Sequence record: PQ471515.1
Direction: 5' to 3' (one strand)
Length of the DNA: 64,000 nt
Numbering within the stretch: the first letter of the stretch is position 1; every line of letters starts with the position of its first letter. A model generated the notes under the pieces. That model was given only the letters and a program-made list of their open reading frames with translations. It was not told the origin of the DNA and searched no databases. Of the stretch, positions 1-64,000 are shown in pieces. A program made the position numbers and the translations under genes.

Positions 1-412
1 ATGAAACCCGTTAGATGATGGCATAGTTTGAACCACTCACGGCAATGCGGCTGTATAAAGAACTCCAATAGGATAAAGAGAGTTCCTCGATAGACATATA
101 AGGATCGCACCTTACCAATTATCTAAGGGAGATTTCATGAGAAATTTGCGGTCGTAATTTATACAAAATAGTTGCGTCCAAAATTCGTGAAATCAAATAC
201 AAGTACTGGTCATATGGTATTTGTATTATGTGTCGGGATGTTTAAGACCGACGACCGTTGCTACAAGAACCGCGATAGAGAGAAACAGAGCAACCCGCTT
301 TCGCCTCGTAAGAGAATTCGTGATATGAACTATGTGAAGGCCACCAGCGTCAAACTTTTTTGTTCTTTCCCCTGCGGGGGGATGAAATATGCTCAAGCAA
401 ACCCCGTCAATA
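1..412 (+). ncRNA. Candidate large structured non-coding RNA, copy A (5' part lies upstream of the window)
   Basis: Block-wise homology to 49838-50310. Stems include CCCGTTAG 7-14/CTAAGGG 123-129, GAACTC 60-65/GAGTTC 80-85, GATTTCATGA 131-140/TCGTGAAATC 185-194, GTCGG 232-236/CCGAC 248-252 and 363-372/377-386. G-U wobbles occur on the + strand. Confidence 0.65.
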
Positions 413-440
413 TTAATTAAAACAAATCATAGTACTTTCG

Positions 441-469
441 TTGAATTAGACATGCGAAGCGTGTATAAT
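441..469 (+). promoter_or_regulatory. sigma70-type promoter TTGAAT-N17-TATAAT
   Basis: TTGAAT 441-446 and TATAAT 464-469, just upstream of the first gene. Confidence 0.6.
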
Positions 470-530
470 TCGACTGGTGTTGATGAAGTCAACGCCATGT
501 ACAGTCATTGATGTTTCCATAGGAATAATG

Positions 531-1073
531 ATGTCATTTATTAAAAAATCTAAAAGCGTCACTTATAAAACACTAGAATTTGTTGATTCAGACAATCAGA
601 ACCAAGACCAAGAGAATTTTACTGGTTTTGTTGTGATTAAAGAAAAGGGATGTATTTCGTACATCAAAGAGTTGCAGTGCGGTTTTGAATTAACTTCCAT
701 TAAGTTATTCCCAACCAAGAAGCCTACAATTCTTAAAGCTCGTTATGGGAACTACTACGAAGAGCGTTATAGTAATAATCTAATCAGTGCGAAAGCACAT
801 ATCGTCAATGGAGAACTAGAAGGAGAATATAGAAAATTCAACCCACAAGGAAAATGTGTTTGGGTTAAATACTTCAATTCAGGAAATGATGTAACATCAG
901 AAATTATTGAGTTTTTAGGTTTAACATGTACCCTTGAAACTCTTCATGATTACAAATTTAATACTGAAGAAGAGTTTAATCTGATGATGCGTTATGGATC
1001 ACATTTTAAATTTTTATATGAATACAACATTGACAGTAGTACTTTTGATGACATAGTACTTAACTGTCTATAA
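531..1073 (+). CDS. Hypothetical protein with a MORN-like repeat and an EEEF C-terminal motif
   Basis: ORF track 477..1073; ATG 531 follows AGGA; contains GELEGEYRKFNPQGK. Confidence 0.65.
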   Translation: MSFIKKSKSVTYKTLEFVDSDNQNQDQENFTGFVVIKEKGCISYIKELQCGFELTSIKLFPTKKPTILKARYGNYYEERYSNNLISAKAHIVNGELEGEYRKFNPQGKCVWVKYFNSGNDVTSEIIEFLGLTCTLETLHDYKFNTEEEFNLMMRYGSHFKFLYEYNIDSSTFDDIVLNCL

Positions 1074-1089
1074 TCAAAGGAAATTATGT

Positions 1090-1614
1090 ATGTCGAAGAA
1101 GGATGCTTCGAAGAAAAAACAATCAGTACATTTCAGTACTGGAAAAGATAACTGGACTACTCCAAAGGATTTCTTTGAAGATTTGGATGAACTCTGGGAA
1201 TTTACACTAGATGCAGCATGTGTTAAAGAAACAGCATTGTGTGATAATTTCTTTACACCAGAAGATAATTCACTTGAACAGGACTGGGGAAACAATATCG
1301 TGTGGCTCAACCCACCGTACAGTGATTTGAAAACGTGGTTATCTAAGGCAGTTGATGCATATAACAAAGGTGCTACAGTACTGATTCTCGTACCATCAAG
1401 AACTGATACTATTGCGTTCCAGGACTATGCGTCTAAGTTATGCGACTGTATTTGTTTTATAAAAGGTCGCTTAAAGTTCGGTATCCCTGAAGAACCAGAT
1501 AAAAAGACGGATAGTGCTCCATTCCCTAGTTGTTTAATAGTACTGGATAAGTATTTGACTCCAGCTAAAATCAACTATCTTAAATCTATTGGTCAGGTGA
1601 TGAAGAACATATGA
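1090..1614 (+). CDS. Phage DNA N6-adenine methyltransferase (phage Dam-like family)
   Basis: NWTTPKDFF, FTLDAAC and VWLNPPYS (NPPY catalytic motif IV), plus LVPSRTDT. Confidence 0.9.
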   Translation: MSKKDASKKKQSVHFSTGKDNWTTPKDFFEDLDELWEFTLDAACVKETALCDNFFTPEDNSLEQDWGNNIVWLNPPYSDLKTWLSKAVDAYNKGATVLILVPSRTDTIAFQDYASKLCDCICFIKGRLKFGIPEEPDKKTDSAPFPSCLIVLDKYLTPAKINYLKSIGQVMKNI

Positions 1615-2144
1615 AAGAAACATGCGTAGTGACATTCGGAAGAATTAACCCAGTACATCGTGGTCATGGTTTAGTATTTGAAAAAGCTCAAGCACTACAA
1701 GAACAGTACAATGCGGATTTGAAAATATTCCTTAGCACCAGTACTGATGCCGTCAAAAACCCATTACCTCCTGAACTGAAAATGTACTATACAGAAGGAT
1801 TTTACCCATCTGTACAAGAAAATATCTATACAGAAGATAATCTGTTTGATATAATGAGAGAACTGGATGGAAAGTACTTAGATGTTCTTTTCATATGTGG
1901 TTCAGACAGACTTGAACCATTCCAAAAAACGCTTGACACGTACAATGGGAAGTTATATAATTTTTGTTCAATCAAGGCAGTTCAAGCTGGAATTGATCGA
2001 AATGTAAGTCGCTACAGTTCCACACAGATGCGTGAGTTTGCCAAGAATGAAGATTTTAATAGCTTCAGTACTTTTCTACCTGGTAATGATGATGCACTGA
2101 AAATTAAACTATTTGAAGATGTAATAAAATACATGAGGAAATAA
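1611..2144 (+). CDS. HxGH-family nucleotidyltransferase (cytidylyltransferase-like)
   Basis: TFGRINPVHRGH (HxGH), CGSDR and SSTQMR motifs. Confidence 0.8.
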   Translation: MKETCVVTFGRINPVHRGHGLVFEKAQALQEQYNADLKIFLSTSTDAVKNPLPPELKMYYTEGFYPSVQENIYTEDNLFDIMRELDGKYLDVLFICGSDRLEPFQKTLDTYNGKLYNFCSIKAVQAGIDRNVSRYSSTQMREFAKNEDFNSFSTFLPGNDDALKIKLFEDVIKYMRK

Positions 2145-2146
2145 CT

Positions 2147-2440
2147 ATGTCAGTACTGTTTAAAACTAACCCAGTACTTTGGGATCAGAATGAGGATTCG
2201 GGTTTCCGTTCAATCCATGTTGAATTCAAAGGTAATACGGTGGTTGCAATCATTGCAAACAAAACTTTAGGAAACTGGACTGCACAAGTTGTTCCTATGG
2301 GATATTCTTATACATCTGATGAAGTTGCGTTTCTGGCTGAATTATATAGTCAAACACCATTCATCATCAATGTTTTAGAGCGTAGTGATAAGTTAACACA
2401 TGACGAAGTAATTGACTTCCTGGCGAACTTACATGTCTGA
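2147..2440 (+). CDS. Hypothetical protein
   Basis: Tightly packed + strand ORF; no motif recognised. Confidence 0.65.
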   Translation: MSVLFKTNPVLWDQNEDSGFRSIHVEFKGNTVVAIIANKTLGNWTAQVVPMGYSYTSDEVAFLAELYSQTPFIINVLERSDKLTHDEVIDFLANLHV

Positions 2441-2720: not shown

Positions 2721-3312
2721 TACATACTTTCGTTATCTTCGCCTAGGGCTTTCCCTACGCCCAATCCGTGGTAAGTGTGATTCACTTGCTGATTTGGATT
2801 ATGCATATGCATTACATTGTGATGGTGTTCAATATGTATTAGGTGACTATGGCACATTCGAAGAATCCAATGACAGTTCAGAAATTATTGCTGGTGTTGC
2901 TAACCTTAACAACATTGCCAATAGTTCTCGTCATGAAATCGTTCTTGAAATTCAGAACTTCATTGAGAAAAATACTGGCAAGCGTACATGGTCATATGTC
3001 GGTACTGATGCACAAATGTCAATCGCATTTGGTAACGAAGATGGTTATGTAGCACAACTTATTATGGATTTCGAATCAGAAGAGAAGTTCCTAGAATACA
3101 AGGAAAAAATCATCCAATCCTTGTTGCAAATGGGTATTCCTGAAGATCGTATGCCTGAAATTCAAAGCATTGATGAGTTTGTTCTTATCCCATCTGATGA
3201 AAAATATGATGCGATGTTTACAGCACTGAACATTCCTGGTGTAGTTGTTGAGTACTTCGATGATGGTGATGGTGACATTTACCTAGATCTCGACGACGAT
3301 GATGATGAATAA
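2701..3312 (+). CDS. Acidic hypothetical protein, probable TTG start
   Basis: In-frame TTG at 2701 preceded by AAGGAG; Asp-rich C-terminus LDLDDDDDE. Confidence 0.7.
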   Translation: MTNTNTNTYFRYLRLGLSLRPIRGKCDSLADLDYAYALHCDGVQYVLGDYGTFEESNDSSEIIAGVANLNNIANSSRHEIVLEIQNFIEKNTGKRTWSYVGTDAQMSIAFGNEDGYVAQLIMDFESEEKFLEYKEKIIQSLLQMGIPEDRMPEIQSIDEFVLIPSDEKYDAMFTALNIPGVVVEYFDDGDGDIYLDLDDDDDE

Positions 3313-3317
3313 CACAT

Positions 3318-3346
3318 ATAGCCCGACATAAGTTCGGGCTATTTTT
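3318..3346 (+). terminator. Rho-independent terminator
   Basis: ATAGCCCGA-loop-TCGGGCTAT followed by a T tract. Confidence 0.85.
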
Positions 3347-3358
3347 GTAAGGGGAAAT

Positions 3359-3628
3359 ATGAATTACAAACATATACAATTCACTTATATGGAATTATTT
3401 AAATTACACCATAATCACAGAAGTACTAACACAATTAATAAAAATGCGTTTACTCATAAATTATGGTCAAATTACCTAGAAGAATTACGTGAGTATTTTA
3501 TTGATACTGAAATTTTCATTAATGGAAAAAAACGAAAGATACTTAGAGTCGATAGTTTTGGTGGTAGATTAGTACTTTCATATAAATTTGATAACGACTT
3601 ATTCTCTGTTGATTTGGTGAATATATGA
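3359..3628 (+). CDS. Small paralog-array protein (QFTY family)
   Basis: N-terminus MNYKHIQFTY shared with neighbours. Confidence 0.75.
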   Translation: MNYKHIQFTYMELFKLHHNHRSTNTINKNAFTHKLWSNYLEELREYFIDTEIFINGKKRKILRVDSFGGRLVLSYKFDNDLFSVDLVNI

Positions 3629-3885
3629 ATTATAAAGATTTCCAATTAACATTCAAGTGCATTCGTGACCTAGCAAATAAAAATAATAGTATATTTTTAG
3701 AAGATACATGTATTGAAATGATTAATATTGTGCGTGAGAGGATTAAAGAAAAATTCAGTACTGTAATTATCAACAACGATCATGCAGAATTTTCAGATAT
3801 AATCATTAAGCTCGATGGTAAAGTAGAGGTACAGTTCTACACTGATTTTGGATTTACGAGTGTTCCTCTGGAGATATTCCCTTGA
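3625..3885 (+). CDS. Small paralog-array protein (QFTY family)
   Basis: MNYKDFQLTFK. Confidence 0.75.
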   Translation: MNYKDFQLTFKCIRDLANKNNSIFLEDTCIEMINIVRERIKEKFSTVIINNDHAEFSDIIIKLDGKVEVQFYTDFGFTSVPLEIFP

Positions 3886-4193
3886 AATTAAATTTGAATG
3901 ATGTTCAATTCACGTATAAAAATATATATGGTTTGTATGACATGTATCTTTTTAGTGGGAAGATTGGTGAACATGTCGAATCAAAAGAATCACCATTTAT
4001 TAATAATTACTATGATTACTTAGATTCTATTGCTGAATATATAAAAAAGAATTACAGTACTTACACTGATGGAGATGACATATTTGAATATTCAGGTGTA
4101 AAATCTTATCAAGGTATTATCCATGTAGAATTTCTTGAAAAAACTGATAGGGAATTTATGGAGATTAAAGTTATGAAGTTAACGGACCTATAA
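3882..4193 (+). CDS. Small paralog-array protein (QFTY family)
   Basis: LNDVQFTYKNIY. Confidence 0.75.
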   Translation: MKLNLNDVQFTYKNIYGLYDMYLFSGKIGEHVESKESPFINNYYDYLDSIAEYIKKNYSTYTDGDDIFEYSGVKSYQGIIHVEFLEKTDREFMEIKVMKLTDL

Positions 4194-4203
4194 GAGTTGA
4201 CAT

Positions 4204-4515
4204 ATGAATATTAATGATATACAATTCACATACAAATTTTTGTATATCCAATACGCTACGGTTGATGCTGGAGAATATCTCTACGGTGAAATCTATCGTT
4301 CGGTATGGATAAAGTTTTTGGATGAATTACATGAATATTACCATGATTTGTGTATAGTTCGTGATAATAAAATATACAAATTCCGCGATATTGTTAGTCA
4401 TAGCGGTAAGCTACGATTGGAATTAAGTACTGATAGTGATGTTGATTGGATTGGTGTAAATTTACTGGAGTTGGAGAATGAAAAACAACTTAAAGGAAAT
4501 ACAAGTATTTTATAA
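4204..4515 (+). CDS. Small paralog-array protein (QFTY family)
   Basis: MNINDIQFTYKFLY. Confidence 0.75.
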   Translation: MNINDIQFTYKFLYIQYATVDAGEYLYGEIYRSVWIKFLDELHEYYHDLCIVRDNKIYKFRDIVSHSGKLRLELSTDSDVDWIGVNLLELENEKQLKGNTSIL

Positions 4516-4762
4516 ATTCTTATACTTGTCATATGTAAAAGATGAGTACTATGAAAGTGTGTATTATTTTTTATGGCAACATTACCGTACTATAGTAAGA
4601 GATTTATATATAGGAAAATCTATCATATCCAATGGTGAAAAATGTATATGTACTGATGTTGTTAGTTTTAATGGTTCTTTAACACTGTGTTTCAGATGCG
4701 ATAATAATAGTGGGTCATTTTCATTAAACGTATATCAATTAGAAGGAATAAATTTTGAATAA
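4478..4762 (+). CDS. Small paralog-array protein (QFTY family)
   Basis: LKEIQVFYKFLY; DVVSFNGSL resembles DIVSHSGKL of the upstream ORF. Confidence 0.75.
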   Translation: MKNNLKEIQVFYKFLYLSYVKDEYYESVYYFLWQHYRTIVRDLYIGKSIISNGEKCICTDVVSFNGSLTLCFRCDNNSGSFSLNVYQLEGINFE

Positions 4763-4955
4763 ATGTCCATATTGCAACAGTACTCAATTAGCTCGTTTCC
4801 GTTTAGATTCAGACTGGGCCACTGGTGCTGGTGATTTCTTTCCCATCAATGATGATTCGGAATACACTGAAGAACAGCACAAAGATTTTGATAAATCATG
4901 GCGACCTGACATTGAGTGCATTTATTGCCTTAATTGTGAGCGTATCCATGACTAA
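4755..4955 (+). CDS. Small Zn-ribbon protein
   Basis: CPYC ... CLNC cysteine pairs. Confidence 0.7.
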   Translation: MNKCPYCNSTQLARFRLDSDWATGAGDFFPINDDSEYTEEQHKDFDKSWRPDIECIYCLNCERIHD

Positions 4956-5211
4956 AGCTGAACTGATCGTGCAAACACTGCGTTTATTGAGGGATTTAGA
5001 TATCCCACGCATGGATGTGAAACTTGAAGATATCTACATTGAATCTCTTAGTGAAGATTACACCGATACCGTAATGATGCTGAATGACGTGCTTTATCGT
5101 ATAGATAGCATCAGTCGTCTTGGAAGTACTTTAAAAGTGAATATGGAAAGAGTTGATAAACTTTACGTACATATATATAGTCTACCCATTTCAATATTAA
5201 ACTATAGATGA
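4948..5211 (+). CDS. Hypothetical protein
   Basis: ORF track 4825..5211; ATG 4948 overlaps the upstream stop. Confidence 0.65.
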   Translation: MTKAELIVQTLRLLRDLDIPRMDVKLEDIYIESLSEDYTDTVMMLNDVLYRIDSISRLGSTLKVNMERVDKLYVHIYSLPISILNYR

Positions 5212-5498
5212 ATATTATATTGATACAAAAAACATATGCGTTATTGATGAAAGAATATACTAATACTTATGATGAAAAGTGCAGTGCAAATCATAATATG
5301 TATAAATTCATTACTCAAGAGTACAGGGATTATATATATGCTGCGTTAGTTGGTAGATATTTCAGTACTAAAAAACGTAAAGAACTCAAAGTTGTAGATA
5401 TTACTTTTTTCTACAACGGGCATATAACAATTCATGGTGTGGAACATAATTCACAAATATATCGTAACTACTCATCCAATGAGGTAACATTTTTATGA
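5208..5498 (+). CDS. Small hypothetical protein, probable distant QFTY family member
   Basis: MNIILIQKTY; similar size and layout to the array. Confidence 0.65.
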   Translation: MNIILIQKTYALLMKEYTNTYDEKCSANHNMYKFITQEYRDYIYAALVGRYFSTKKRKELKVVDITFFYNGHITIHGVEHNSQIYRNYSSNEVTFL

Positions 5499-5668
5499 GA
5501 GCATTATTTTTTATCTGGAGTCTTTTTTCACTAGCAGTACTGACAGTAAGTGGGATTTGTTTCCTTTCGACAATGAATGTCTGGTACATTAATTTACTAT
5601 TCCCATTCGTAGGTGTAGGTTTAGGATTTACTTTACATAGTGTTTGTAAGGATTTTAATGGCAAATAA
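5495..5668 (+). CDS. Small two-TM membrane protein (57 aa, not in ORF track)
   Basis: Manual translation MRALFFIWSLFSLAVLTVSGICFL...; ATGA overlap with the upstream gene. Confidence 0.55.
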   Translation: MRALFFIWSLFSLAVLTVSGICFLSTMNVWYINLLFPFVGVGLGFTLHSVCKDFNGK

Positions 5669-5942
5669 ATCGAATGAAGTACTTGTTGCTGAAACGATGA
5701 AGATGGTTTATACCATAACAACTAGTAATGATATGTCTTACCCAATTAAGTCCAAGTTGAGGGATATAACTCTTCAGGTTATACAGCAGTACTACAAATC
5801 TAAACACAAAAGTATTATTAATGTTTATCGTGACTATGAAAGGATTCGCATTTTGTTCTGGAACAAGAATCGAGTTCGTTCGGAATGTGATATAGAAAAC
5901 TTTAAATTTGAGAATCTTTATTGTTACAAAGCGGGACAATAG
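5658..5942 (+). CDS. Hypothetical protein
   Basis: ORF track 5640..5942; ATG 5658. Confidence 0.6.
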   Translation: MANKSNEVLVAETMKMVYTITTSNDMSYPIKSKLRDITLQVIQQYYKSKHKSIINVYRDYERIRILFWNKNRVRSECDIENFKFENLYCYKAGQ

Positions 5943-5960
5943 CTCAAGTAGTGATATAAT
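5933..5960 (+). promoter_or_regulatory. Promoter GGGACA-N16-TATAAT with TG extended -10
   Basis: One of six instances with identical spacing. Confidence 0.7.
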
Positions 5961-6000
5961 ATTGGATGAGGAACAATAACTAACACAAGGAGTGTGTAAA

Positions 6001-6729: not shown

Positions 6730-6738
6730 GGAACTGTT

Positions 6739-7023: not shown

Positions 7024-7067
7024 AAATATAGGCCAGCGTTTGCTGGTCTTTTTTCGCAGGTACAAAG

Positions 7068-7370: not shown

Positions 7371-7374
7371 AATT

Positions 7375-8064: not shown

Positions 8065-8065
8065 T

Positions 8066-9468: not shown

Positions 9469-9494
9469 TACTATCTAGCCTAGCACAAGGAGAA

Positions 9495-9752: not shown

Positions 9753-9761
9753 GGAGTTCAT

Positions 9762-10287: not shown

Positions 10288-10290
10288 AGG

Positions 10291-18932: not shown

Positions 18933-19724
18933 ATGAAATTTGTTGTAACGTCAGACGTACACGGTGGCACTGATTACCTCCATAGTGGTGATTACAGTGA
19001 TACAGTGCTGATTATTGCAGGGGACTTTGATGAAGCTAAACGCAGTCGTTATCGTACTGGTATCGAATCCCTGTGCAAGCAGTTCAAGAATGTAGTACTG
19101 GTTCCTGGTAATCATGAGTACTACGGTTCAAACATTCACAAGACTAATAAAGTACTATCCGATATGCAAGATGAGATTCCAAATTTCATCTTTTTGCAAA
19201 ACAAATTTGTATGGCTGGATGGTGTACTGCTGGTTGGCAGTACACTGTGGACTGACTTTGATAAAGGCAACGCACTGGTTAAGTTTGATGCTCAACAAAA
19301 GATGAATGATTATAAACACATTCGTCATGGAACAACATCAGAACCGTGGAAACGTAAGCTCAAACCTGATGATGTTGAGTTCATGCATCATCAGGATAAA
19401 CAATTTATCAAAAATTCAGTTAACACAGTTCGTCTAATGAATGATAATGATTTCAAGGTTGTGGTGGTAACACATCATGCACCAAGTTATCAGAGTGTAT
19501 CTCCGAGATACAAGAATGACTCACTGAATGGATGTTATTGTTCTGATATGGACCAGTACATCGAAGATTTGGGTGCTGATGTTTGGATTCATGGTCACGT
19601 TCATAGTAGTTTTGACTACAACATTGGAAAAACTCGTATCATTTGTAACCCAAGAGGTTATGAATCTTACAGTGGTGCATGTGAGAACTTCGATTACGAT
19701 CCTAAATTTGTATTTGAAATCTAA
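18933..19724 (+). CDS. Calcineurin-like metallophosphoesterase
   Basis: SDVHG, AGD, PGNHE, VTHHAP, WIHGHVH and NPRGY. Confidence 0.9.
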   Translation: MKFVVTSDVHGGTDYLHSGDYSDTVLIIAGDFDEAKRSRYRTGIESLCKQFKNVVLVPGNHEYYGSNIHKTNKVLSDMQDEIPNFIFLQNKFVWLDGVLLVGSTLWTDFDKGNALVKFDAQQKMNDYKHIRHGTTSEPWKRKLKPDDVEFMHHQDKQFIKNSVNTVRLMNDNDFKVVVVTHHAPSYQSVSPRYKNDSLNGCYCSDMDQYIEDLGADVWIHGHVHSSFDYNIGKTRIICNPRGYESYSGACENFDYDPKFVFEI

Positions 19725-22695: not shown

Positions 22696-22696
22696 T

Positions 22697-23917: not shown

Positions 23918-23919
23918 AA

Positions 23920-32405: not shown

Positions 32406-32438
32406 TATCAGTACTGTTATAGTGGCAGTACTTTTTAA

Positions 32439-37761: not shown

Positions 37762-40458
37762 ATGTCAAAGAAAATATATGGTGGCTTAGACGTCACTCAT
37801 AATGTGACAGTTAAAGGGAAAAGAACAGTACAGGGCATCAATGATCAAGTATTTGATGCTAATGGTAATATGGAAATTGATACATATTCCAAAGAAGAAT
37901 TACTTGATGTAATTAGTTTACTTCCAATCTCGCATTATGGTACACATAACTATCTACCTGCTGGGGTATCTGGTGATTTTAATGGTGCATCAGAAAACCA
38001 ATCCCAACGTAGAAACAAAATACTTTTAGAAAACGATGGCACATTAGTACTATTACGTAGTGGTACAAACGGTAGTGTTGAAGGTTTATTTTATTCTTAC
38101 CTAGCGAACGCATTATCCGTTACCGATATGAGCCGTACTGTTAATACAAGCCGTCAGTATAAGCCTGGCTATTTTGGGGCAAACCGTGTTGCTATTGGTT
38201 TATACAATACCGATTCAAAAATACTGTTAGGTCGTTACAATGACACATCTACCAATACTAATGGGTTGTTTATATCAGTAACGAATGGTACATTGGATGA
38301 TACACAACATAGTGGTCTTTTTGTGAACCAAGCTGATATTTCACCTGAAGGTGGGATTGAGTATGCTATGATGGCAGAAGACGGTTCAGTTTATGTATTC
38401 AACGTCCTTAATGAAAATAACAAACTACAGATTGTTGTTGTTCGTGTTGTATTGAATATTGCAAACGGTACTTATACTGCTACCCGAATCACGGGATGGA
38501 CAACAAAAACTTTTTACAATACTACATATACTGCTCAGAATAATATAATCATTACTGACCATGTTAACTCAACTAATATTGCTGATAAGCCCTATGTCTA
38601 TGTACCACAAAATTTGGCTGGTATGGGGATTTATATGACATCTATCGATTTATATGTTGCTCAGGAGCCAGGAACGCAGAACTTCCGATTCAGAATGAAT
38701 GGTGACGCATGGTTCACTATGGCAAACTACAATACCCGACCACAGCATAGTTATAGTTTCAATTTTAACATGAGTACTAAACAATGTAACTTGGATAATG
38801 GGAACGATATTGGTACATTTGCTGCACCATTTGTTGTTACAAACACAGGTTCGGCATTGGTTGCTACTGGTAATGTTCTCAACAACGATCCGTTATATGA
38901 TCATAGCGGTGCAAGAAACATTTACAGTTCATATTATTATCTGAATACAGGTGAAGTATTCTGTACTGCATGTCCAAACTTAGCAGAACCATTACTTATG
39001 CAGAAAGCTAAATTTACTGCACAATCAATATATAGCATGATTAATGTACGTGCGAACATTTCAACTGATTTCAGAAATGGCATAGTTCGTCCTTCATTTG
39101 GTTCAGCAGTTGGTTCTTTTATTAACGGCGTAGAATTGCTTCCAGGGAACAGTACTAAACAGTATTCTCGTTCATCTGGTTCTGGTGCATTCCGTCCATC
39201 TTATGCAGTTCATAAAAGTACTCCTAACTTTACGTTTAATTCTTTATCACGTGGAACCATACAAGGTTATGAGCCAACAACAGAACGTGCTAATGTGACA
39301 GATAACACGAACAACAGAGTTTTTATTAGTTCCATTAGTGGTAATAATGTTACTACTAATGGTGGGATATTCATGGTAGGTCAAAGATATTCCCAATCAC
39401 TATCATATGATAAAAATATGAACGGAACTGGTATCATTAGTGTTACTCAATCTGTACTTGATAATTTCAGAAATGCTGAATACGCCAAAGTACTAAGCGA
39501 CTGGAACTTATCTTCTGCTGCTTATAAAGATATGACATTGTTTGTTCCACAACAAACTGATATACCTGCATTCGTAATGCTAAGTACAGTTACAAATACA
39601 TATCAGAACTATATTAGAATTGCTGAAGTGAATGTGAATACACGTTCAGGTAATATCACTACAATTACCTTCAAGCGTTTAGTACTAGAAAACGTTTACG
39701 GAAGTAACTTTACACCAAATGGTAATGGTAGTTTTGCTTCGTCTTCTGTTGGTTTAACAATATATGATGGTGGTTCTTTCTACTTCATAGGTGGTTCTGA
39801 CCCATTATCTCACCCAACTATTGGTAATACAAACACACACCAATTCAGAGCATATGTAACAAAAGCAACTGCACAATTTGATAGTTTTATTATCAGTGGT
39901 TCACATGCAAGTTATGAGCAAGGTATTCAACCAGCAGCTTTACCTGGTATTGGTTTTGGTTATTTCCAAGCAATAGACTATGTAAACAAAATGACTTTCC
40001 AAAAATGCGGTACTACAATTGCTGATTATAATAACTGGACTGCTCAAGGTGCACCGATTAACGTAGTTTCACAAGACGTTGCTCAAGGTTTTATTGTGTA
40101 CTTCACAGAAGAAACTCCAGTAATTCTTTCTGGTAAAGCATTTACATTACCGATTACTAGTATAAACTTAACTACAGTTAAGGCTAATCCAGCAAACACA
40201 TTATTTCATGTATATGTTAAAATGGAACAAGGTAATGCAAAATATGTAATAACAACTGATGTTATTTCAGAAACTGGTACTACAGCATATAATATTTTCT
40301 GGATAGGTACTATACAAACAAACTCACTACAAATATCAAATGTTAACATACAAAAACGTTCAAGATTGGATATTTTCGGTGCGTCTCTTGAAGCTGCTGG
40401 TTCTTCATTCCCAGTTAGTTATGGCCTACCGTCACAAACAGGAACAATCAATTGGTAA
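37762..40458 (+). CDS. Large virion structural / tail-fibre-like protein (paralog 1)
   Basis: 898 aa, T/S/N/G-rich and beta-rich; N- and C-terminal modules shared with the two downstream ORFs. Confidence 0.65.
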   Translation: MSKKIYGGLDVTHNVTVKGKRTVQGINDQVFDANGNMEIDTYSKEELLDVISLLPISHYGTHNYLPAGVSGDFNGASENQSQRRNKILLENDGTLVLLRSGTNGSVEGLFYSYLANALSVTDMSRTVNTSRQYKPGYFGANRVAIGLYNTDSKILLGRYNDTSTNTNGLFISVTNGTLDDTQHSGLFVNQADISPEGGIEYAMMAEDGSVYVFNVLNENNKLQIVVVRVVLNIANGTYTATRITGWTTKTFYNTTYTAQNNIIITDHVNSTNIADKPYVYVPQNLAGMGIYMTSIDLYVAQEPGTQNFRFRMNGDAWFTMANYNTRPQHSYSFNFNMSTKQCNLDNGNDIGTFAAPFVVTNTGSALVATGNVLNNDPLYDHSGARNIYSSYYYLNTGEVFCTACPNLAEPLLMQKAKFTAQSIYSMINVRANISTDFRNGIVRPSFGSAVGSFINGVELLPGNSTKQYSRSSGSGAFRPSYAVHKSTPNFTFNSLSRGTIQGYEPTTERANVTDNTNNRVFISSISGNNVTTNGGIFMVGQRYSQSLSYDKNMNGTGIISVTQSVLDNFRNAEYAKVLSDWNLSSAAYKDMTLFVPQQTDIPAFVMLSTVTNTYQNYIRIAEVNVNTRSGNITTITFKRLVLENVYGSNFTPNGNGSFASSSVGLTIYDGGSFYFIGGSDPLSHPTIGNTNTHQFRAYVTKATAQFDSFIISGSHASYEQGIQPAALPGIGFGYFQAIDYVNKMTFQKCGTTIADYNNWTAQGAPINVVSQDVAQGFIVYFTEETPVILSGKAFTLPITSINLTTVKANPANTLFHVYVKMEQGNAKYVITTDVISETGTTAYNIFWIGTIQTNSLQISNVNIQKRSRLDIFGASLEAAGSSFPVSYGLPSQTGTINW

Positions 40459-40470
40459 AGGATTAATCTT

Positions 40471-41058
40471 ATGGCATATATTATAAGATCCGATATCGAA
40501 GCTATGTCACAAATCGTAGTCCAGAATAAAAACACTGGACTATCTATTAGTGATATTAATGACGTATCGTATCGAACAGACGCAAATGGGGAATGTACAT
40601 TCCCCCTCTTAACAAAAGATGAAGTTGATTCTATTGTTAACGGTTTACCATTATCACAATATGGTGAACTTTATGATGTATCTAGTTTGTCAATTACATC
40701 AAGCGGTTATTCATTACGTTTTAACCGAGAGATACCTGCATTCATCGGTGGCTATCTTTATAATTACCCTGTTGTTGCAGTGACAGCACCAACAGTGGCA
40801 TCAGGCACACAAACACAATATGTATACGCTACTTTAGTACTGGGTGAGCCAATTTATAGAATCTCAACTTCACAATTACAAGAATCACAGATTATAATGT
40901 TCATCGGGACTATTACCGTTGGAACTTCTGGTATTACTGCTATCAACATTGAACGCGTATCACGATTCAATACATACAGACCAAGTACAACACAAAAAGG
41001 TTCATCTTTCCCAGTCAGTACTGGAAATCCAACACAAACTGGTACATTAGGCTGGTAA
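40471..41058 (+). CDS. Short paralog of the tail-fibre-like proteins (terminal modules only)
   Basis: LPLSQYG N-module and GSSFPVSTGNPTQTGTLGW C-module. Confidence 0.65.
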   Translation: MAYIIRSDIEAMSQIVVQNKNTGLSISDINDVSYRTDANGECTFPLLTKDEVDSIVNGLPLSQYGELYDVSSLSITSSGYSLRFNREIPAFIGGYLYNYPVVAVTAPTVASGTQTQYVYATLVLGEPIYRISTSQLQESQIIMFIGTITVGTSGITAINIERVSRFNTYRPSTTQKGSSFPVSTGNPTQTGTLGW

Positions 41059-41074
41059 TTAAAGGAAAAAGAAT

Positions 41075-43804
41075 ATGTCATCCAAACGCATCATTGGTAG
41101 TGCTGCTATACTTGGAAATTTGGCAATTGGTGGAAAGTACGCTATGCGTACTTTTAATGGTACAGCACCAGACGCAAATACAGGTATTGTTGACTATCCA
41201 ATTTATAAAAGATCAGAAGTTCAAAAAATACTTGATATGTTACCAATCTCCCGTATAGGGGAGATGGATTATCTACCATTAAACGTTAATGGTTCATACG
41301 AAGGGGCAACGTCGCTTTCAGATGTATACCGTATGCAGCCAACAATAGTCGAAGATGATGGTACTGGTGTGGTATTACGTGCTGGTACAAATGGTAGTAC
41401 TGAAGGATATTACTATGCATTCATTCGTGATTTGCGTAATATTGATGCACTAACACAAAGTAGTGTTATCAGTACTACATCAAAATATCATCCGAGAATT
41501 CTTCCAAGTACTGAAAATGTTAAACAGTTCATCGGAACGAATGGTTATGAATTGCTAGTTAGCCTATCTAGTGCAAGTAATTATATTTTCACTTTAACAA
41601 ATGGTACATTTAACGAAGTTGCACATATTCACGCTTCTATCGCTGCTACAGCATTTGGTACAGATAAACCATTATATGCACATATCGTCAATGATAAAGT
41701 ATTTGTGTGGTGCAAAGACACTACTATAGCAAACTATGGTTTGGCTTTAACATTATATACTGTTAATACAAGTAGTATTAAAGATGGTACTATGAGTACT
41801 TTTGCTAAGGTTACTGGTTTTTCTGGTCAAACCTTAAGAAGTGTTAACTACACAAGTGCTAATAATTTGAAAATTTATGAAAGATTATATTCAGTTGGAA
41901 CTAGTAGTGATTCATTATTTGAATGCACTTCACCAGTTACACGAGTTGAATATTCAGATTATACAGATTATAATATACAAGCAAACGTAAGTCCCGATTT
42001 ATCAAAGATTAGAATTACATTATTCCCAACTAACCGTTTAGTATCAAATCTATATATTAGTACTGTTTATGCTAGTGGTTTTAGTTTTGTTTACACGATC
42101 AACTCTAAATCATTATCAATTGATGGAAGTAGTAGAGCACCAATAGCAGCGGAATATAATGATGTTGATGGATTCACATTAACAAACCCATTTGCCATTG
42201 AGATGAATAACTTCATGGGTACACAGTTAGGTGTTCCGCAATTAGGCAACGTTGGTTCTATATGCCAAACCTATGACGGTTTGGTATTCAGTACTCGTGC
42301 TCGTTGGAGTTCTTCTGAAACCTATGGTATTCAGGTTTATAACGTAACAGGAACACCATATGATAGTTGGGTTGCCAGTACTCGCAAAGCGAACAATTCT
42401 AAATTTGTAAACGTTGCCCCAACATATGGTAGTGCAGTAGGTGAAAACCTTTTAGGAACACGTTTTATTGATAAACGTAAAGTACTGTTAGCATGTTCTG
42501 GAACATATGAAGATGAGTCATATGGTTATAACAATACAGTATTTTCTGAAATTGGTACTGATCCAACCTTCCAGTTCAATTCAGTACAAAACAATACAAC
42601 ACTTAATGGTTTTGCACCACAAGCCAACCGAACTCGCCTCGGCGACAACTACAAATATACAGGTATGATTTCATTAATTGATACTGACGGTTCAGTTAAA
42701 TGTTATGGGACATCATTCATTGAAGGTGTATACAAAACAAGTGGTGGTTTGTTTAACCCAGATACTTTAGAATTTGATGGTTCTTATACAATTGGTGATA
42801 ATGTTCTGGAAACATTAAAACAAGAAATACTTGCTAATATTGGAATAGTAGGAGCATTTACTGGTAAAATTGCTTTATATTATGTACCAGATAGTTCTTT
42901 CTCAAAATCTATTGCGGTGGTTTCTGCATATAACTTAGGCAATAACCAAGGTTATGCAATATATTCTGAAGTTGATGTTACAATTTCAGGAACCAATATT
43001 AGTTCTGCGACTATGGTGAGTTCTAGATACGAAACACTTAATTCTGTAACAGGTATTGTAACTGAAGCCTATATGAAACGCTGTACTGGTCTAACTGTTG
43101 CAAAGTATTCTGGCTTTGGTTATATTGGGGTTGATGCAGTTCATCAGTTTTCACAACCAGGTAATGCTCAATTCAAATTGATGATTGCTAAAACAGTGAA
43201 TGGTTTGATTACATCTAACCGTTTTATGTCATCCAGCTACATAGATAATGGCAATGCATTCCAGCACGGAGTTATACCAGGTGTTGGATTTGGATACTAT
43301 CATCTACAAGATTCAGATTATCAAACCAAAGCAGTGTTTAGTCTCTTCGGGACAACATCAGCACAGATGGATGGGTTGATTGATGGTTCAGGAACTGTAC
43401 AAGATAAAATCGTAGTAGTTTCACAAGATGTTGCTGAAGGTTTCACTGTGTACTTCACCCGTGAAGTTCCGGTATTCCTTGGTGGTATGTTTGATAGATT
43501 AGCGATTCAAACCATAGAATTAAGTACTATTAAAACTAACCCAGCTAACAGTACTTTTTATCTTTACATTCAAATGAACCGTAACACAAGAAAAGCGGCA
43601 TACGTTATCAGTACAACTCTTCTTGATGAGACATTGACAAACGTATACGTTGGTGATATTGTTACTGGAAGTACGAGTATCACGTCAATTGATACGGAAA
43701 AGGTAACACGATTCTTGACATACAGACCTAGTACAACCAAGCGTGGTTCTGCTATCCCTGCAAGTACTGGTGTTCCTTCAAGCTCTGGTACACGTTGGCA
43801 TTAA
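41075..43804 (+). CDS. Large virion structural / tail-fibre-like protein (paralog 3)
   Basis: 909 aa; LPISRIG, LRAGTNGSTEGYYY, VSQDVAEGF and GSAIPASTGVP shared with paralog 1. Confidence 0.65.
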   Translation: MSSKRIIGSAAILGNLAIGGKYAMRTFNGTAPDANTGIVDYPIYKRSEVQKILDMLPISRIGEMDYLPLNVNGSYEGATSLSDVYRMQPTIVEDDGTGVVLRAGTNGSTEGYYYAFIRDLRNIDALTQSSVISTTSKYHPRILPSTENVKQFIGTNGYELLVSLSSASNYIFTLTNGTFNEVAHIHASIAATAFGTDKPLYAHIVNDKVFVWCKDTTIANYGLALTLYTVNTSSIKDGTMSTFAKVTGFSGQTLRSVNYTSANNLKIYERLYSVGTSSDSLFECTSPVTRVEYSDYTDYNIQANVSPDLSKIRITLFPTNRLVSNLYISTVYASGFSFVYTINSKSLSIDGSSRAPIAAEYNDVDGFTLTNPFAIEMNNFMGTQLGVPQLGNVGSICQTYDGLVFSTRARWSSSETYGIQVYNVTGTPYDSWVASTRKANNSKFVNVAPTYGSAVGENLLGTRFIDKRKVLLACSGTYEDESYGYNNTVFSEIGTDPTFQFNSVQNNTTLNGFAPQANRTRLGDNYKYTGMISLIDTDGSVKCYGTSFIEGVYKTSGGLFNPDTLEFDGSYTIGDNVLETLKQEILANIGIVGAFTGKIALYYVPDSSFSKSIAVVSAYNLGNNQGYAIYSEVDVTISGTNISSATMVSSRYETLNSVTGIVTEAYMKRCTGLTVAKYSGFGYIGVDAVHQFSQPGNAQFKLMIAKTVNGLITSNRFMSSSYIDNGNAFQHGVIPGVGFGYYHLQDSDYQTKAVFSLFGTTSAQMDGLIDGSGTVQDKIVVVSQDVAEGFTVYFTREVPVFLGGMFDRLAIQTIELSTIKTNPANSTFYLYIQMNRNTRKAAYVISTTLLDETLTNVYVGDIVTGSTSITSIDTEKVTRFLTYRPSTTKRGSAIPASTGVPSSSGTRWH

Positions 43805-62501: not shown

Positions 62502-62511
62502 AATATAAATT

Positions 62512-62541
62512 AAGGACTCTGATTACAGAGTCCTTTCTTTT
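62512..62541 (+). terminator. Rho-independent terminator
   Basis: AAGGACTCTG/CAGAGTCCTT followed by a T tract. Confidence 0.85.
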
Positions 62542-62552
62542 CGGAGAATATA

Positions 62553-63032
62553 ATGATACATGAACATTGTGGTAATCTGTTTGATTTATTCAGTACTGTT
62601 ACTACTGATCAAACTGCATTACATATTATCGCTCATGGTTGTAACGCTCAGGGTAAGATGGGTTCTGGTTTTGCAAAAGAATTAAGAAAGCGTCACCAAT
62701 TGGCATATGATGTGTATCATACACGTTATACCAATCAGAATGGTTTGAAATTGGGTGAAGTTGTCTATGCAGCACCAAATAATAACTTAATTATTGCAAA
62801 CTGCATTACACAAGAGTATTATGGTAATGATGGTAAGAAGTATGTAAGTTATGATGCGATTGACCTTGCATTTAACTCGATGAATGAATTCATTAAAAAT
62901 GAACCACAAGAGATCCATGTACACTTCCCGAAAATTGGAGCCGATTTAGGCGGTGGTAACTGGAACGTTATCAAAGAAATCATTGACCACAGACTGGTTA
63001 ATGCAGAAAAACACTTATACATTCTAAAATAA
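62553..63032 (+). CDS. Macro-domain (ADP-ribose-processing) protein, T4 Tk.4-like
   Basis: IAHGCNAQGKMGSGFA and FPKIGADLGGGNW. Confidence 0.88.
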   Translation: MIHEHCGNLFDLFSTVTTDQTALHIIAHGCNAQGKMGSGFAKELRKRHQLAYDVYHTRYTNQNGLKLGEVVYAAPNNNLIIANCITQEYYGNDGKKYVSYDAIDLAFNSMNEFIKNEPQEIHVHFPKIGADLGGGNWNVIKEIIDHRLVNAEKHLYILK

Positions 63033-63051
63033 ACAAAAGGACTTGACAAAA

Positions 63052-63360
63052 ATGACTATGACCGTTAAACTACTAAACATCAACAGCGTTGGCCCAGTAC
63101 TAGCAATTCTACAAAATGATGCACCAGAAGCAGTAGTAGTTAACTACCCAGCACAGCTAGGTACTGACGAACAAGGTGAAATCATTCTACGTGATTACCT
63201 AGAATTCATTAGTTCTGAAAAAGGCGTTATTTTTTATAAATCCAACATCATTAGCATCAGCGATGCAAACCCTGCACTAGTTGAAGCTTATGTTGAAGCA
63301 ATCAAGGCTATCGAAGAAAAACCAGCACTGATTGTTCCTGATAACAAAATCATTCTATAA
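63052..63360 (+). CDS. Hypothetical protein
   Basis: AAGGA upstream; high-expression-type codons. Confidence 0.7.
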   Translation: MTMTVKLLNINSVGPVLAILQNDAPEAVVVNYPAQLGTDEQGEIILRDYLEFISSEKGVIFYKSNIISISDANPALVEAYVEAIKAIEEKPALIVPDNKIIL

Positions 63361-63372
63361 TAGAGGTATCTA

Positions 63373-63750
63373 ATGGCTGCTCAAAACGTTAAAGTTAAAA
63401 CTATCCAAGCTATCGTAGTACTGAAAGATTCTACTCCATCACCAAAAGAACTGGTCATGGCTGGTATGACAATGCTACATCAGTACAATCCAGAATCACC
63501 TAACTATGTACTGGAATACGAAGCGAAGCAGTTTAAAGAACATTGGCAGTCATGGATTAAAGATAATGAAATGGAACAGGTTGTTTATGCTGCTGATGAC
63601 ATTTTCGAATTAGAAAAAATCGAATATCTAGCAGGACAACAATCTGTACCATTGAGTATCTTCGGTAATGGAGAAGAAGTTTTAGTACTGGGACCATTTA
63701 CCGCTGATGCCATCATGCATTTACTAAGTAATTGTAAAAAAGTTGGCTAA
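63373..63750 (+). CDS. Degenerate PTH2-fold protein
   Basis: QAIVVLKD...WQSW...QVVYAA...VLVLGPFTADAIMHLL follows the PTH2 secondary-structure pattern. Confidence 0.5.
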   Translation: MAAQNVKVKTIQAIVVLKDSTPSPKELVMAGMTMLHQYNPESPNYVLEYEAKQFKEHWQSWIKDNEMEQVVYAADDIFELEKIEYLAGQQSVPLSIFGNGEEVLVLGPFTADAIMHLLSNCKKVG

Positions 63751-63961
63751 AAAACAAATATTATCAGGTTACCGTAATAACACGTTGCACTACAATGACT
63801 TAAAGTACTGGGTTGACCCACACAACAATAAGTCATTGTTGCTGTACAGAGATAAATTTCGAGATTTGTACGGTATATATGACACACAGTTAATATACTT
63901 AGTTGATACCGAACATTTTGCTCCTATGGTATACTTGTATTGCTTGTATAATTCCAAATAA
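63743..63961 (+). CDS. Small hypothetical protein
   Basis: TTG start overlapping the upstream gene. Confidence 0.5.
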   Translation: MAKKQILSGYRNNTLHYNDLKYWVDPHNNKSLLLYRDKFRDLYGIYDTQLIYLVDTEHFAPMVYLYCLYNSK

Positions 63962-64000
63962 CTATTAGCACCTCTAAATAATGTATATAAACATTAATGA

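What the first reader, a model, noticed from the sequence alone, without database searches (positions are those of the whole stretch)
1..64000. Strong enrichment of the palindrome AGTACT across the whole window
Seen, by approximate manual count: ~35 copies in 1-10 kb, ~30 in 10-20 kb, ~18 in 20-30 kb, ~29 in 30-40 kb and ~19 in the 6 kb tail-fibre-like block. Only ~3-4 per 10 kb are expected from base composition at ~33% GC (my estimate). The site occurs in all three reading frames (Ser-Thr, Val-Leu, xx-Tyr) and between genes, often as CAGTACT(G/A), so protein sequence does not explain it. Established: lytic phages usually deplete 6-bp palindromes because of restriction, and AGTACT is the ScaI site. 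Inference: a positively selected DNA motif, for example a binding site for a genome-organising or packaging protein, a Chi/KOPS-like recombination or translocation signal, or a modification target.
Basis: partly seen in the sequence, partly recalled or inferred. Interest (0 to 1): 0.78.

Follow-up and report, generated by a model that had tools for sequence, protein, structure and literature searches.

The report
Tenfold-enriched AGTACT word in jumbo phage
The six-letter palindrome AGTACT occurs about ten times more often than chance throughout this giant E. coli virus and its close relatives, most likely because a still unidentified protein reads it on the DNA, which would make it an unusual genome-wide signal in a virus that otherwise avoids such palindromes.

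Summary
The window is Escherichia phage Turkey3 (361 kb, PBECO4/121Q-like), record 62,001-126,000. AGTACT occurs 182 times against about 19 expected and is the most frequent of all hexamers. It stays enriched under Markov, synonymous-codon, codon and codon-pair nulls, in all three frames and in non-coding DNA. Genome-wide there are 981 copies against about 111 expected, roughly 17 times the density in a host sample. Flanks are two-fold symmetric (C before, G after) whatever the gene orientation.

The enrichment is shared by the Rak2-like phages of Enterobacterales (EJP2, Munch, RaK2, GAP32, two metagenomic contigs). It is absent from more distant relatives and from unrelated E. coli phages that share early genes. 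Sites are conserved in position twice as often as matched hexamers, yet most turn over. In the early regions of Turkey3 and GAP32 the word sits at two fixed offsets in sigma70-type promoters.

Best reading (about 0.45): a selected binding site for a lineage-specific, symmetric DNA-binding protein, not yet identified. SlmA sites, the two phage methyltransferases, a repair drive and codon effects were tested and are disfavoured.

Outside the window, an 8.8-kb gene block has no ACT at all on its sense strand, and this is conserved across Asteriusvirus.

The parts
1..64000 (.). 182 dispersed AGTACT sites (extended form YAGTACTR, optimum TTCAGTACTGAA), about 2.8 per kb. 169 lie inside genes in all three frames, and 12-13 are intergenic or at ORF edges.
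37762..43804 (+). Two large ORFs (898 and 909 aa, no Pfam match) carrying 19 sites. The density (3.1 per kb) is ordinary for this genome.
   Evidence: Site list; annotation; Pfam
32410..32432 (.). Two AGTACT sites 17 bp apart in the 45-bp intergenic gap upstream of the gene starting at 32,451. This is an example of intergenic sites.
19094..19156 (.). Cluster of three sites within 63 bp inside the metallophosphatase gene. This is an example of the mild excess of short spacings (12-23 bp).
1090..1614 (+). T1-type Dam N6-adenine methyltransferase (PF05869). It was considered as a possible reader or writer of the word and judged unlikely.
   Evidence: RaK2 methylation data in PMC3622015
27978..29417 (+). 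PhoH2-type protein (N-terminal PIN_4 endoribonuclease domain plus PhoH ATPase). It is not part of the AGTACT signal. It is an untested candidate for the enzyme avoided by the ACT-free gene block found outside the window.
   Evidence: PMC7390352; PMC5499597

Best explanation
AGTACT (wider form C-AGTACT-G, at best TTCAGTACTGAA) is a positively selected word on duplex DNA. It is read by a two-fold symmetric, probably dimeric, sequence-specific DNA-binding protein that belongs to the Rak2-like phages of Enterobacterales and has not been identified. About 1,000 copies, one per roughly 370 bp, mark the whole phage chromosome at about 17 times the density of host DNA. In the early region two copies bracket the -35 element and spacer of host-type promoters. 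The same reader therefore most likely also controls early transcription, with shut-off the most probable effect, while its dispersed sites serve a genome-wide role such as coating, organising or distinguishing phage DNA.

Shown: the enrichment, its DNA-level symmetry, its lineage restriction, weak purifying selection per site with turnover, and the conserved promoter placement.

Inferred: that a protein reads it, that the protein is phage-encoded, and what binding achieves.
For: The enrichment is ten-fold and survives all nulls. Flank preferences are palindromic and identical in + and - strand gene blocks, as expected for a symmetric dimer on duplex DNA. Non-coding DNA is enriched 6.7-fold. 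There is a cost to proteins: Ser-Thr is the most over-represented dipeptide (1.65x, 62% encoded AGT-ACT), Val-Leu is at 1.5x, and the reversed dipeptides sit at 1.0. Positional conservation is 35% against 17.6% for same-composition hexamers at about 74% nucleotide identity (odds ratio 2.55, p=1e-9). The word is the top over-represented hexamer in four further Rak2-like genomes spanning several genera and the most enriched palindromic hexamer in two metagenomic contigs. It is not enriched in Vibrio phage 2.275.O or Atu_ph07, is depleted in PA5oct and XacN1, and is not enriched in 42 metagenomic relatives. It is also not enriched in E. coli phages phi92 (0 against 13 expected) and Murica, which share early genes with Turkey3. 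So it tracks the phage lineage, not the host. In the early regions, 21 of 25 (Turkey3) and 9 of 11 (GAP32) stringent sigma70-like promoters carry the word at the same offsets: starting 5-6 nt before the -35 hexamer and 7 nt before the -10 hexamer, usually both, 20-22 bp apart. In the block where ACT is forbidden, the 5-of-6 form AGTACA is kept at about 5 per kb with the usual C/G flanks, so the pressure persists on DNA even when the exact word cannot exist.
Against: No reader protein was identified, and there are no binding data. Most individual sites are not conserved (only 3 of 108 are shared by five genera). Spacing outside the early region is close to random. Both fit a diffuse pressure that could also be an enzyme preference or a drive. 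The promoter placement could be sites filling the only tolerated positions in a region under pressure for high density. Phage lineage and host order coincide, so a host reader is not strictly excluded.
Confidence: 0.45

Rival explanations
1. The word is the preferred action site of a phage DNA enzyme rather than a passive binding site. Candidates are the phage type II topoisomerase (a 4-base stagger would give A/GTAC/T), a nicking or recombination-initiating endonuclease, or a primase-helicase loading preference. Selection would then keep many sites so the reaction is available everywhere on a 361-kb chromosome.
For: The symmetry, the dispersed near-random spacing and the uniform density of about 2.3-2.8 per kb in both gene orientations suit an enzyme needed genome-wide. 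The phage encodes its own topoisomerase II subunits, primase, helicase, endonuclease VII, HNH and TnsA-like nucleases.
Against: Nothing links any of these enzymes to AGTACT. The fixed two-site placement in early promoters across genera is not expected for a topoisomerase or primase site. Relatives with the same enzyme set (PA5oct, Vibrio phage 2.275.O) lack the enrichment.
Confidence: 0.15
2. A neutral molecular drive: a biased mutation, mismatch-repair or gene-conversion process in this lineage converts near-matches into AGTACT, as very-short-patch repair inflates CCWGG in E. coli, without the word having a function.
For: Site turnover is high at constant density and spacing is nearly random. 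Enrichment appears in every frame and in non-coding DNA.
Against: None of the 18 one-mismatch neighbours is depleted (0.66-2.9 times expectation; AGTATT and AATACT are normal). Sites are conserved twice as often as matched hexamers. A 5.7-kb stretch of the same genome has no site although AGT and ACT are allowed there. Placement in promoters is fixed across genera. A ten-fold effect far exceeds the E. coli precedent as I recall it.
Confidence: 0.12
3. A host protein of Enterobacterales reads the word. The obvious candidate is the nucleoid-occlusion factor SlmA, whose site GTGAGTACTCAC has AGTACT at its centre. The phage would then recruit or titrate it, for example to block cell division.
For: The core is identical to the centre of the SlmA site (PMC3020112). 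All hosts of the enriched clade sampled or listed are Enterobacterales, apart from one Xanthomonas-labelled record.
Against: SlmA strongly prefers G1, T2, A4 and G5 and accepts a purine at position 3. The phage has no match to GTRAGYRCTYAC in 361 kb. Only 12.5% of sites have purine/pyrimidine flanks against 48% with the opposite, and G at -1 and C at +1 are the rarest flanks. E. coli phages phi92 and Murica do not enrich the word, and phi92 lacks it entirely. No other host protein with this site is known to me.
Confidence: 0.1
4. The word is the target of a DNA modification (methylation or another base change) that serves as an epigenetic self-mark.
For: The phage encodes two DNA methyltransferases.
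Against: One enzyme is a T1-type Dam. The other aligns end to end with the DNMT3 catalytic domain. RaK2 DNA is reported as CpG-methylated and cut only by enzymes insensitive to Dam, Dcm, CpG and EcoKI methylation (PMC3622015). Neither GATC nor CpG occurs in AGTACT. Being a modification target does not by itself explain a ten-fold excess.
Confidence: 0.06
5. The signal acts on RNA: AGUACU in transcripts is a target or decoy for a sequence-specific ribonuclease such as the phage PhoH2-type protein.
For: The genome shows a strong RNA-like, strand-specific constraint on ACT elsewhere. A PIN+PhoH protein is encoded in the window.
Against: A palindromic core with palindromic flanks, equal behaviour in both gene orientations, sites upstream of transcription starts in promoters, and retention of AGTACA in the ACT-free block all point to DNA rather than RNA.
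Confidence: 0.04
6. A by-product of codon, codon-pair or amino-acid usage.
For: AGT, ACT, GTA and TAC are common codons here.
Against: 169 sites against 42 with protein and codon usage fixed. Two-fold excess in frames 1 and 2 over a codon-pair-preserving expectation. 12 against 1.8 in non-coding DNA. AGT-ACT 80 against ACT-AGT 6.
Confidence: 0.01

Closest known systems
SlmA-binding sites (E. coli) and Noc-binding sites (B. subtilis)
   Same: Palindromic words scattered over a chromosome and read by a dimeric DNA-binding protein. The SlmA consensus GTGAGTACTCAC even contains AGTACT (PMC3020112).
   Different: About 50 sites per 4.6-Mb chromosome (ChIP-seq) against about 1,000 per 0.36 Mb here. 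The phage flanks oppose the SlmA requirements, with no full match. SlmA sites are reported to avoid promoters, whereas here the word is built into early promoters.
Over-represented genomic words read by DNA machines: Chi, KOPS/FtsK sites, DNA uptake sequences (my knowledge)
   Same: Short words kept at high copy number by selection or drive. Individual copies turn over while density is maintained.
   Different: Those words are asymmetric and polar with respect to replication or uptake. This one is a perfect palindrome with palindromic flanks, sits in a lytic phage, and its reader is unknown.
Operators of phage repressors and of phage DNA-binding proteins that prefer sites in early promoters, for example TF1 of Bacillus phage SPO1 (my knowledge)
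   Same: Two sites on the same DNA face bracket the -35 element and spacer of host-type early promoters, conserved between genera.
   Different: Operators number a few per genome. Here more than 90% of copies are intragenic and far from promoters.
Restriction-site avoidance in phages
   Same: The same genome shows it clearly: 26 of 64 palindromic hexamers are absent from the window, with about 100 occurrences expected in total.
   Different: AGTACT goes the opposite way, ten-fold up, while relatives outside the clade (PA5oct 1 against 15, XacN1 0 against 8) and the unrelated E. coli phage phi92 (0 against 13) have fewer sites than expected.
Genes that lack the cleavage triplet of an mRNA interferase, for example ACA and MazF (this concerns the side observation, the ACT-free block)
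   Same: Strand-specific absence of one triplet from a set of transcripts.
   Different: The triplet is ACU alone, whereas ACA and ACG are abundant. The known E. coli toxin ChpB, which cleaves ACD (PMC12151602), therefore does not fit. The void spans an 8.8-kb multigene block including intergenic DNA.

Membership tests
SlmA-binding site (SBS) | 12-bp palindrome with G1, T2, purine 3, A4, G5 in each half (PMC3020112) | tested here: not met
   No match to GTRAGYRCTYAC in 361 kb. Position 3 is C (a pyrimidine) in 45% of sites and G in 9%. G at -3 is at or below its background frequency.
Polar chromosome words (Chi, KOPS) | Asymmetric sequence whose orientation is skewed with replication or strand | tested here: not met
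   Core and flanks are palindromic, so no orientation can exist.
Restriction-modification target with cognate methyltransferase | A methyltransferase in the genome whose specificity is the enriched word | tested here: inconclusive
   Only a T1-type Dam and a DNMT3-like C5 enzyme were found. RaK2 DNA is reported as CpG-methylated and resistant to enzymes blocked by Dam, Dcm, CpG or EcoKI methylation. No direct modification map exists for AGTACT.
Repair-driven word inflation (very-short-patch type) | Depletion of the one-step neighbour words that the repair converts | tested here: not met
   All 18 one-mismatch neighbours are at 0.66-2.9 times expectation. AGTATT is at 45 against 34-50 expected and AATACT at 42 against 35-43.
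Operator of a dimeric transcription regulator | Palindromic site at fixed positions relative to -35 and -10, conserved in relatives | tested here: met
   Met in the early regions: Turkey3 21 of 25 and GAP32 9 of 11 promoters, with the same offsets. This applies outside the window only; the window has no such promoter.
Operator of a dimeric transcription regulator | An identified regulator that binds the site | not testable with these tools
   No candidate protein could be singled out. Binding data are needed.
Repeat or mobile-element copies | Sites embedded in longer repeated sequence | tested here: not met
   No two window sites have 24 flanking bases differing at 6 or fewer positions.
mRNA-interferase avoidance (side observation, ACT-free block) | Strand-specific absence of the cleavage triplet over whole transcripts | tested here: met
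   No ACT in 8,790 nt of the sense strand, with AGT at 237 copies (normal). The void is 179 times the mean spacing, against at most 30 times for any triplet in 12 other loci. It is conserved in fEgEco12, EC.P1, 121Q and Turkey5.
mRNA-interferase avoidance (side observation, ACT-free block) | A ribonuclease with matching specificity | tested here: inconclusive
   ChpB cleaves ACD and does not fit. The phage PhoH2-type protein is a candidate by analogy with mycobacterial PhoH2, which prefers AC[A/U][A/U][G/C], but ACA is abundant in the block.

The most novel reading that the evidence does not exclude
Rak2-like jumbo phages label their whole chromosome with a private palindromic word, read by a lineage-specific dimeric protein. 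That protein both times the host-type early promoters and lets the phage machinery tell its unmodified DNA from host DNA, which has 17-fold fewer sites. In Asteriusvirus this is layered with a second, RNA-level code: a block of about 25 genes whose transcripts contain no ACU and so escape an ACU-directed ribonuclease, possibly the phage's own PhoH2.
Probability: 0.2. Interest if true: 0.88.

Novelty: new variant of a known kind. Interest (0 to 1): 0.72.

Why it matters
Lytic phages with ordinary bases are expected to shed short palindromes, and this genome does so for 26 of 64 of them. One palindrome raised ten-fold across several genera, at a measurable cost to protein sequence, implies a strong and unrecognised DNA-level function in a group of phages whose genes are mostly of unknown function (83% for phAPEC6, by that paper's abstract).

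If a reader protein exists, it gives a handle on how non-nucleus-forming jumbo phages organise, time or protect a 360-kb chromosome. It would also be the first phage example, to my knowledge, of a genome-wide palindromic recognition word.

In practice the word is a sharp signature for this clade in metagenomes: every sampled genome or contig with portal identity of about 72% or more is enriched, and no more distant sample is.

The ACT-free block adds a second, directly testable puzzle about sequence-specific RNA cleavage during infection.

Tried and rejected
- **Codon or codon-pair artefact:** rejected by synonymous, codon and dicodon nulls and by non-coding DNA.
- **Repeat copies:** rejected.
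- **SlmA sites:** the lead came from memory and the site was confirmed in PMC3020112. It was then rejected on flanks and on the absence of any full site.
- **Methyltransferase target:** the two enzymes point to GATC and CpG.
- **Very-short-patch-like drive:** no neighbour word is depleted.
- **General property of E. coli phages or of the host:** phi92, Murica and E. coli DNA are not enriched.
- **Different palindromes in sister lineages**, which would suggest co-evolving protein-site pairs: none comparable in 42 metagenomic relatives.
- **Helical periodicity of spacing outside the early region:** only a mild excess at 12-23 bp.
- **Position within genes or upstream of starts:** flat.
- **Is the ACT-free block an assembly artefact?** No; four independent genomes show it.
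- **Transcription signals at its borders:** inconclusive.
- **Pfam on ten of its proteins:** no informative match; one weak sub-threshold RING-variant hit.
- **Literature:** no paper in the library pairs AGTACT with these phages. Absence from that library is not proof of novelty.

Full report
**Identity and observation.** The window is 100% identical to Escherichia phage Turkey3 (PQ471515.1), record positions 62,001-126,000. Turkey3 is a 361,208-bp PBECO4/121Q-like jumbo myovirus. Almost all genes in the window are on the + strand. AGTACT occurs 182 times against 18.8 +/- 4.1 in dinucleotide-preserving shuffles. AGTACT is the most frequent of all hexamers in the window.

**Null models.** Markov expectations are 18 (order 1), 35 (order 2) and 64 (order 3). 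Only the order-4 model, which is built from the motif's own pentamers, comes near (153).
- Inside genes there are 169 sites. Shuffling synonymous codons with the proteins fixed gives 42 +/- 5.7, and shuffling codons gives 23.5 +/- 4.9.
- Frames 0, 1 and 2 hold 80, 28 and 61 sites.
- For frames 1 and 2 the site spans three codons, so a codon-pair-preserving expectation can be computed. It gives 14.6 and 31.5 against 28 and 61 observed (p=1e-3 and 2e-6).
- In frame 0, AGT-ACT occurs 80 times against 6 for the same two codons in reverse order.
- Non-coding DNA holds 12 sites against 1.8 expected.
- No other palindrome of the same G+C content exceeds 1.4 times expectation, and 26 of 64 palindromic hexamers are absent although about 100 occurrences are expected in sum.

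**Anatomy of the word.** The base before the site is C in 48% of cases and the base after is G in 48%. G before and C after are the rarest flanks. Weaker T-rich and A-rich preferences extend the palindrome to TTCAGTACTGAA. CAGTACTG occurs 40 times against 0.86 expected. The flank preferences are mirror-symmetric and the same in blocks of + and - strand genes. No two sites share similar flanks, so these are not repeat copies. Sites show no preference for a position within genes or upstream of starts.

**Whole genome and early region.** Turkey3 holds 981 sites against about 111 expected. Most of the genome has 2-3 per kb, rising to about 7 per kb in record 1-20 kb, a region of small genes with regular intergenic gaps. 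There the word sits in host-type promoters at two fixed places: fused to the -35 element and just upstream of the -10 element, often both, 20-22 bp apart. 21 of 25 stringent sigma70-like promoters carry it.

GAP32, a different genus on a different host, has 181 sites in its first 30 kb. Nine of its 11 such promoters have the word at the same offsets: starting 5-6 nt before the -35 hexamer and 7 nt before the -10 hexamer. The sigma70-like promoters found in phi92's early region, which shares sequence with Turkey3's, lack it. The window itself has no promoter of this kind; its sites are the dispersed, mostly intragenic class.

**Who has it.**
- AGTACT is the top over-represented hexamer in EJP2, Munch, RaK2 and GAP32 (5.5- to 7.4-fold). 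It is the most enriched palindromic hexamer in two metagenomic contigs with 73% portal identity.
- It is not enriched in Vibrio phage 2.275.O or Atu_ph07, is depleted in PA5oct (1 against 15 expected) and XacN1 (0 against 8), and is not enriched in 42 metagenomic relatives of about 45-49% portal identity. None of those shows any comparably enriched palindrome.
- E. coli phages phi92 (0 against 13) and Murica (7 against 10.7), which share early genes with Turkey3, are not enriched.
- A 100-kb sample of E. coli DNA has 0.16 sites per kb, close to expectation.

The feature therefore belongs to the Rak2-like lineage infecting Enterobacterales and not to the host or to E. coli phages in general.

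**Evolutionary behaviour.** At about 74% nucleotide identity, 35% of Turkey3 sites in the portal region are AGTACT at the aligned position in another genus, against 17.6% for hexamers of the same composition (odds ratio 2.55, p=1e-9). Only 3 of 108 sites are shared by all five genera. Density is thus maintained by many weakly selected sites that turn over.

The word distorts proteins. Ser-Thr is the most enriched dipeptide (129 against 78 expected; 62% encoded AGT-ACT). Val-Leu is at 1.5 times and Gln-Tyr is also raised, while Thr-Ser and Leu-Val sit at 1.0. The phage carries tRNA-Ser genes with anticodons GCU and ACU and two tRNA-Thr(UGU) genes. This may help decode the favoured codons, but that link is inference.

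**Explanations tested and set aside.**
- *Methylation target.* The genome encodes a T1-type Dam (window 1,090-1,614) and a C5 enzyme that aligns end to end with the DNMT3 catalytic domain. The RaK2 paper reports CpG methylation, and digestion only by enzymes insensitive to Dam, Dcm, CpG and EcoKI methylation (PMC3622015). Neither GATC nor CpG is part of AGTACT.
- *SlmA.* Its site GTGAGTACTCAC contains the word but strongly prefers G1, T2, A4 and G5 and takes a purine at position 3 (PMC3020112). The phage has no full match in 361 kb, and its flanks favour the opposite bases.
- *Repair drive.* None of the 18 one-step neighbours is depleted.
- *RNA-level signal.* The symmetry, the independence from gene orientation and the promoter sites upstream of transcription starts argue against it.

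**Deserts and a side discovery.** Two stretches of Turkey3 outside the window lack the word: record 22,227-27,942 and 30,000-39,128. The second is remarkable. From 30,004 to 38,792 the + (sense) strand has no ACT at all, while ACA occurs 264 times and AGT 237 times. AGTAC is still enriched (54 against 8 expected) but is followed by A in 49 of 54 cases, with the usual C and G flanks. The void is 179 times the mean ACT spacing. The next-largest void for any triplet in this genome is 23 times, and in twelve other loci at most 30 times.

It is not an assembly artefact. fEgEco12 and EC.P1 show it. 121Q shows a 7.5-kb void although one block protein that was compared is only 56% identical. Turkey5 shows a 4.4-kb void. 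The tested block protein has homologues only in Asteriusvirus-type phages of Escherichia and Salmonella, and ten block proteins have no informative Pfam match.

The natural reading is escape from a ribonuclease that needs ACU. The known E. coli toxin ChpB cuts ACG, ACA and ACU and so does not fit (PMC12151602). The window encodes a PIN+PhoH (PhoH2-type) protein at 27,978-29,417, and mycobacterial PhoH2 is reported to prefer AC[A/U][A/U][G/C] (PMC7390352). This is a candidate by analogy only.

For the main finding the block is informative. Where the exact word is forbidden, its nearest permitted form is kept at about 5 per kb, so the pressure for the word acts on DNA and persists.

**Most likely mechanism.** I commit to a binding site for a lineage-specific, two-fold symmetric DNA-binding protein (confidence about 0.45). 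It would have two layers of use: paired sites that bracket the -35 element and spacer of early promoters, most simply to repress them after the early phase, and about a thousand dispersed sites that mark the chromosome. What the dispersed sites achieve (coating, compaction, protection, or discrimination of unmodified phage DNA from host DNA) is inference. The rivals, in order, are:
- an enzyme action site (0.15);
- a neutral drive (0.12);
- a host reader (0.10);
- a modification target (0.06);
- an RNA signal (0.04);
- a coding artefact (0.01).

**Comparison and novelty.** The closest known systems are the palindromic nucleoid-occlusion sites (SlmA, Noc), the over-represented polar words (Chi, KOPS, uptake sequences) and phage operators. 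This case differs from each in symmetry, copy number, location or carrier. I found no description of it in the searchable literature, which does not prove that none exists. I rate it a new variant of a known kind. The ACT-free block may be further from anything known.

**Limits and disclosure.** Relatives were sampled as 15-50-kb pieces, not whole genomes. The gene model used for the codon nulls is my own ORF call, checked by eye against the annotation. No reader protein was identified.

The 12-base SlmA consensus was used as a literature search term and was then confirmed by the paper. The 8-base Chi sequence was used in a script, so the Chi count rests on my recollection. Statements about T4, SPO1 TF1, very-short-patch repair and primase or topoisomerase preferences rest on my own knowledge, not on tool results.

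Noticed in passing
Outside the window: Turkey3 record 30,004-38,792 (L003, same coordinates); also L018, L019, L020:3660-11169, L025:6754-11155: An 8.8-kb block of about 25 small + strand genes with no ACT on the sense strand (ACA 264, AGT 237). AGTACA replaces AGTACT there. The block is conserved in four other Asteriusvirus genomes although a block protein tested is down to 56% and 23% identity. The void is 179 times the mean spacing. This suggests escape from an ACU-requiring ribonuclease; no known E. coli toxin fits.
   Followed up: yes
window 27978-29417 (+): The annotated 'PhoH-like protein' has the PhoH2 architecture (PIN_4 endoribonuclease domain at residues 4-156, PhoH ATPase at 269-473). 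Mycobacterial PhoH2 is reported as a sequence-preferring RNase/helicase (AC[A/U][A/U][G/C]). It is a candidate, untested, for the enzyme behind the ACT-free block.
   Followed up: partly
Outside the window: Turkey3 record 22,227-27,942 (L003): A 5.7-kb array of about 27 small tandem genes without any AGTACT, although AGT and ACT are present. 10 of 11 GTACT there are TGTACT, the mirror image of the AGTACA seen in the ACT-free block. 121Q and Turkey5 show similar stretches (a few TGTACT; AGT as low as 3 per kb in Turkey5).
   Followed up: partly
Outside the window: Turkey3 record 281,036-281,896 (L007:5036-5896): The 286-aa C5 cytosine methyltransferase aligns over its full length with the catalytic domain of animal DNMT3A/3B (E about 1e-23), better than with bacterial M.HhaI or M.HaeIII. 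This fits the CpG methylation reported for RaK2.
   Followed up: partly
Outside the window: L007:16716-21180: The tRNA cluster includes tRNA-Ser with anticodons GCU and the unusual ACU, plus two tRNA-Thr(UGU). These are the decoders of the AGU and ACN codons that the DNA word forces into genes.
   Followed up: no
Outside the window: Turkey3 record 3,000-10,900 against phi92, rV5-like and phAPEC8-like phages: The early region shares 67-78% identical stretches with unrelated 135-150-kb E. coli myoviruses, so early genes appear to be exchanged between phage families. Several records labelled as Campylobacter phages also match and may be mislabelled.
   Followed up: partly
window 1-64000: Strong avoidance of other short palindromes: 26 of 64 palindromic hexamers are absent, GATC is at 96 against 202 expected and TGATCA at 11 against 34. 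This suggests exposure to restriction despite the two methyltransferases.
   Followed up: partly
Whole Turkey3 genome; L005, L010, L013: CTGGTG is among the most over-represented hexamers in the portal regions. No expectation was computed.
   Followed up: no
Outside the window: Turkey3 record 337,098-357,400: An array of about 17 paralogous - strand genes annotated as RCC1/HERC1-like repeats, next to the densest AGTACT region. GAP32 begins with an RCC1-like gene too.
   Followed up: no
L082, L079 (IMG/VR contigs, about 49% portal identity): TGGCCA is moderately enriched (18 against 4.0 and 17 against 4.9 expected) in two environmental relatives. This is the only hint of another enriched palindrome in the wider group, and it is far weaker than AGTACT.
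   Followed up: no
window 50065-50223 (-): The only annotated - strand gene in the window (52 aa) lies in a 690-bp gap between + strand genes. An AGTACT site sits at its 3' end (50067).
   Followed up: no
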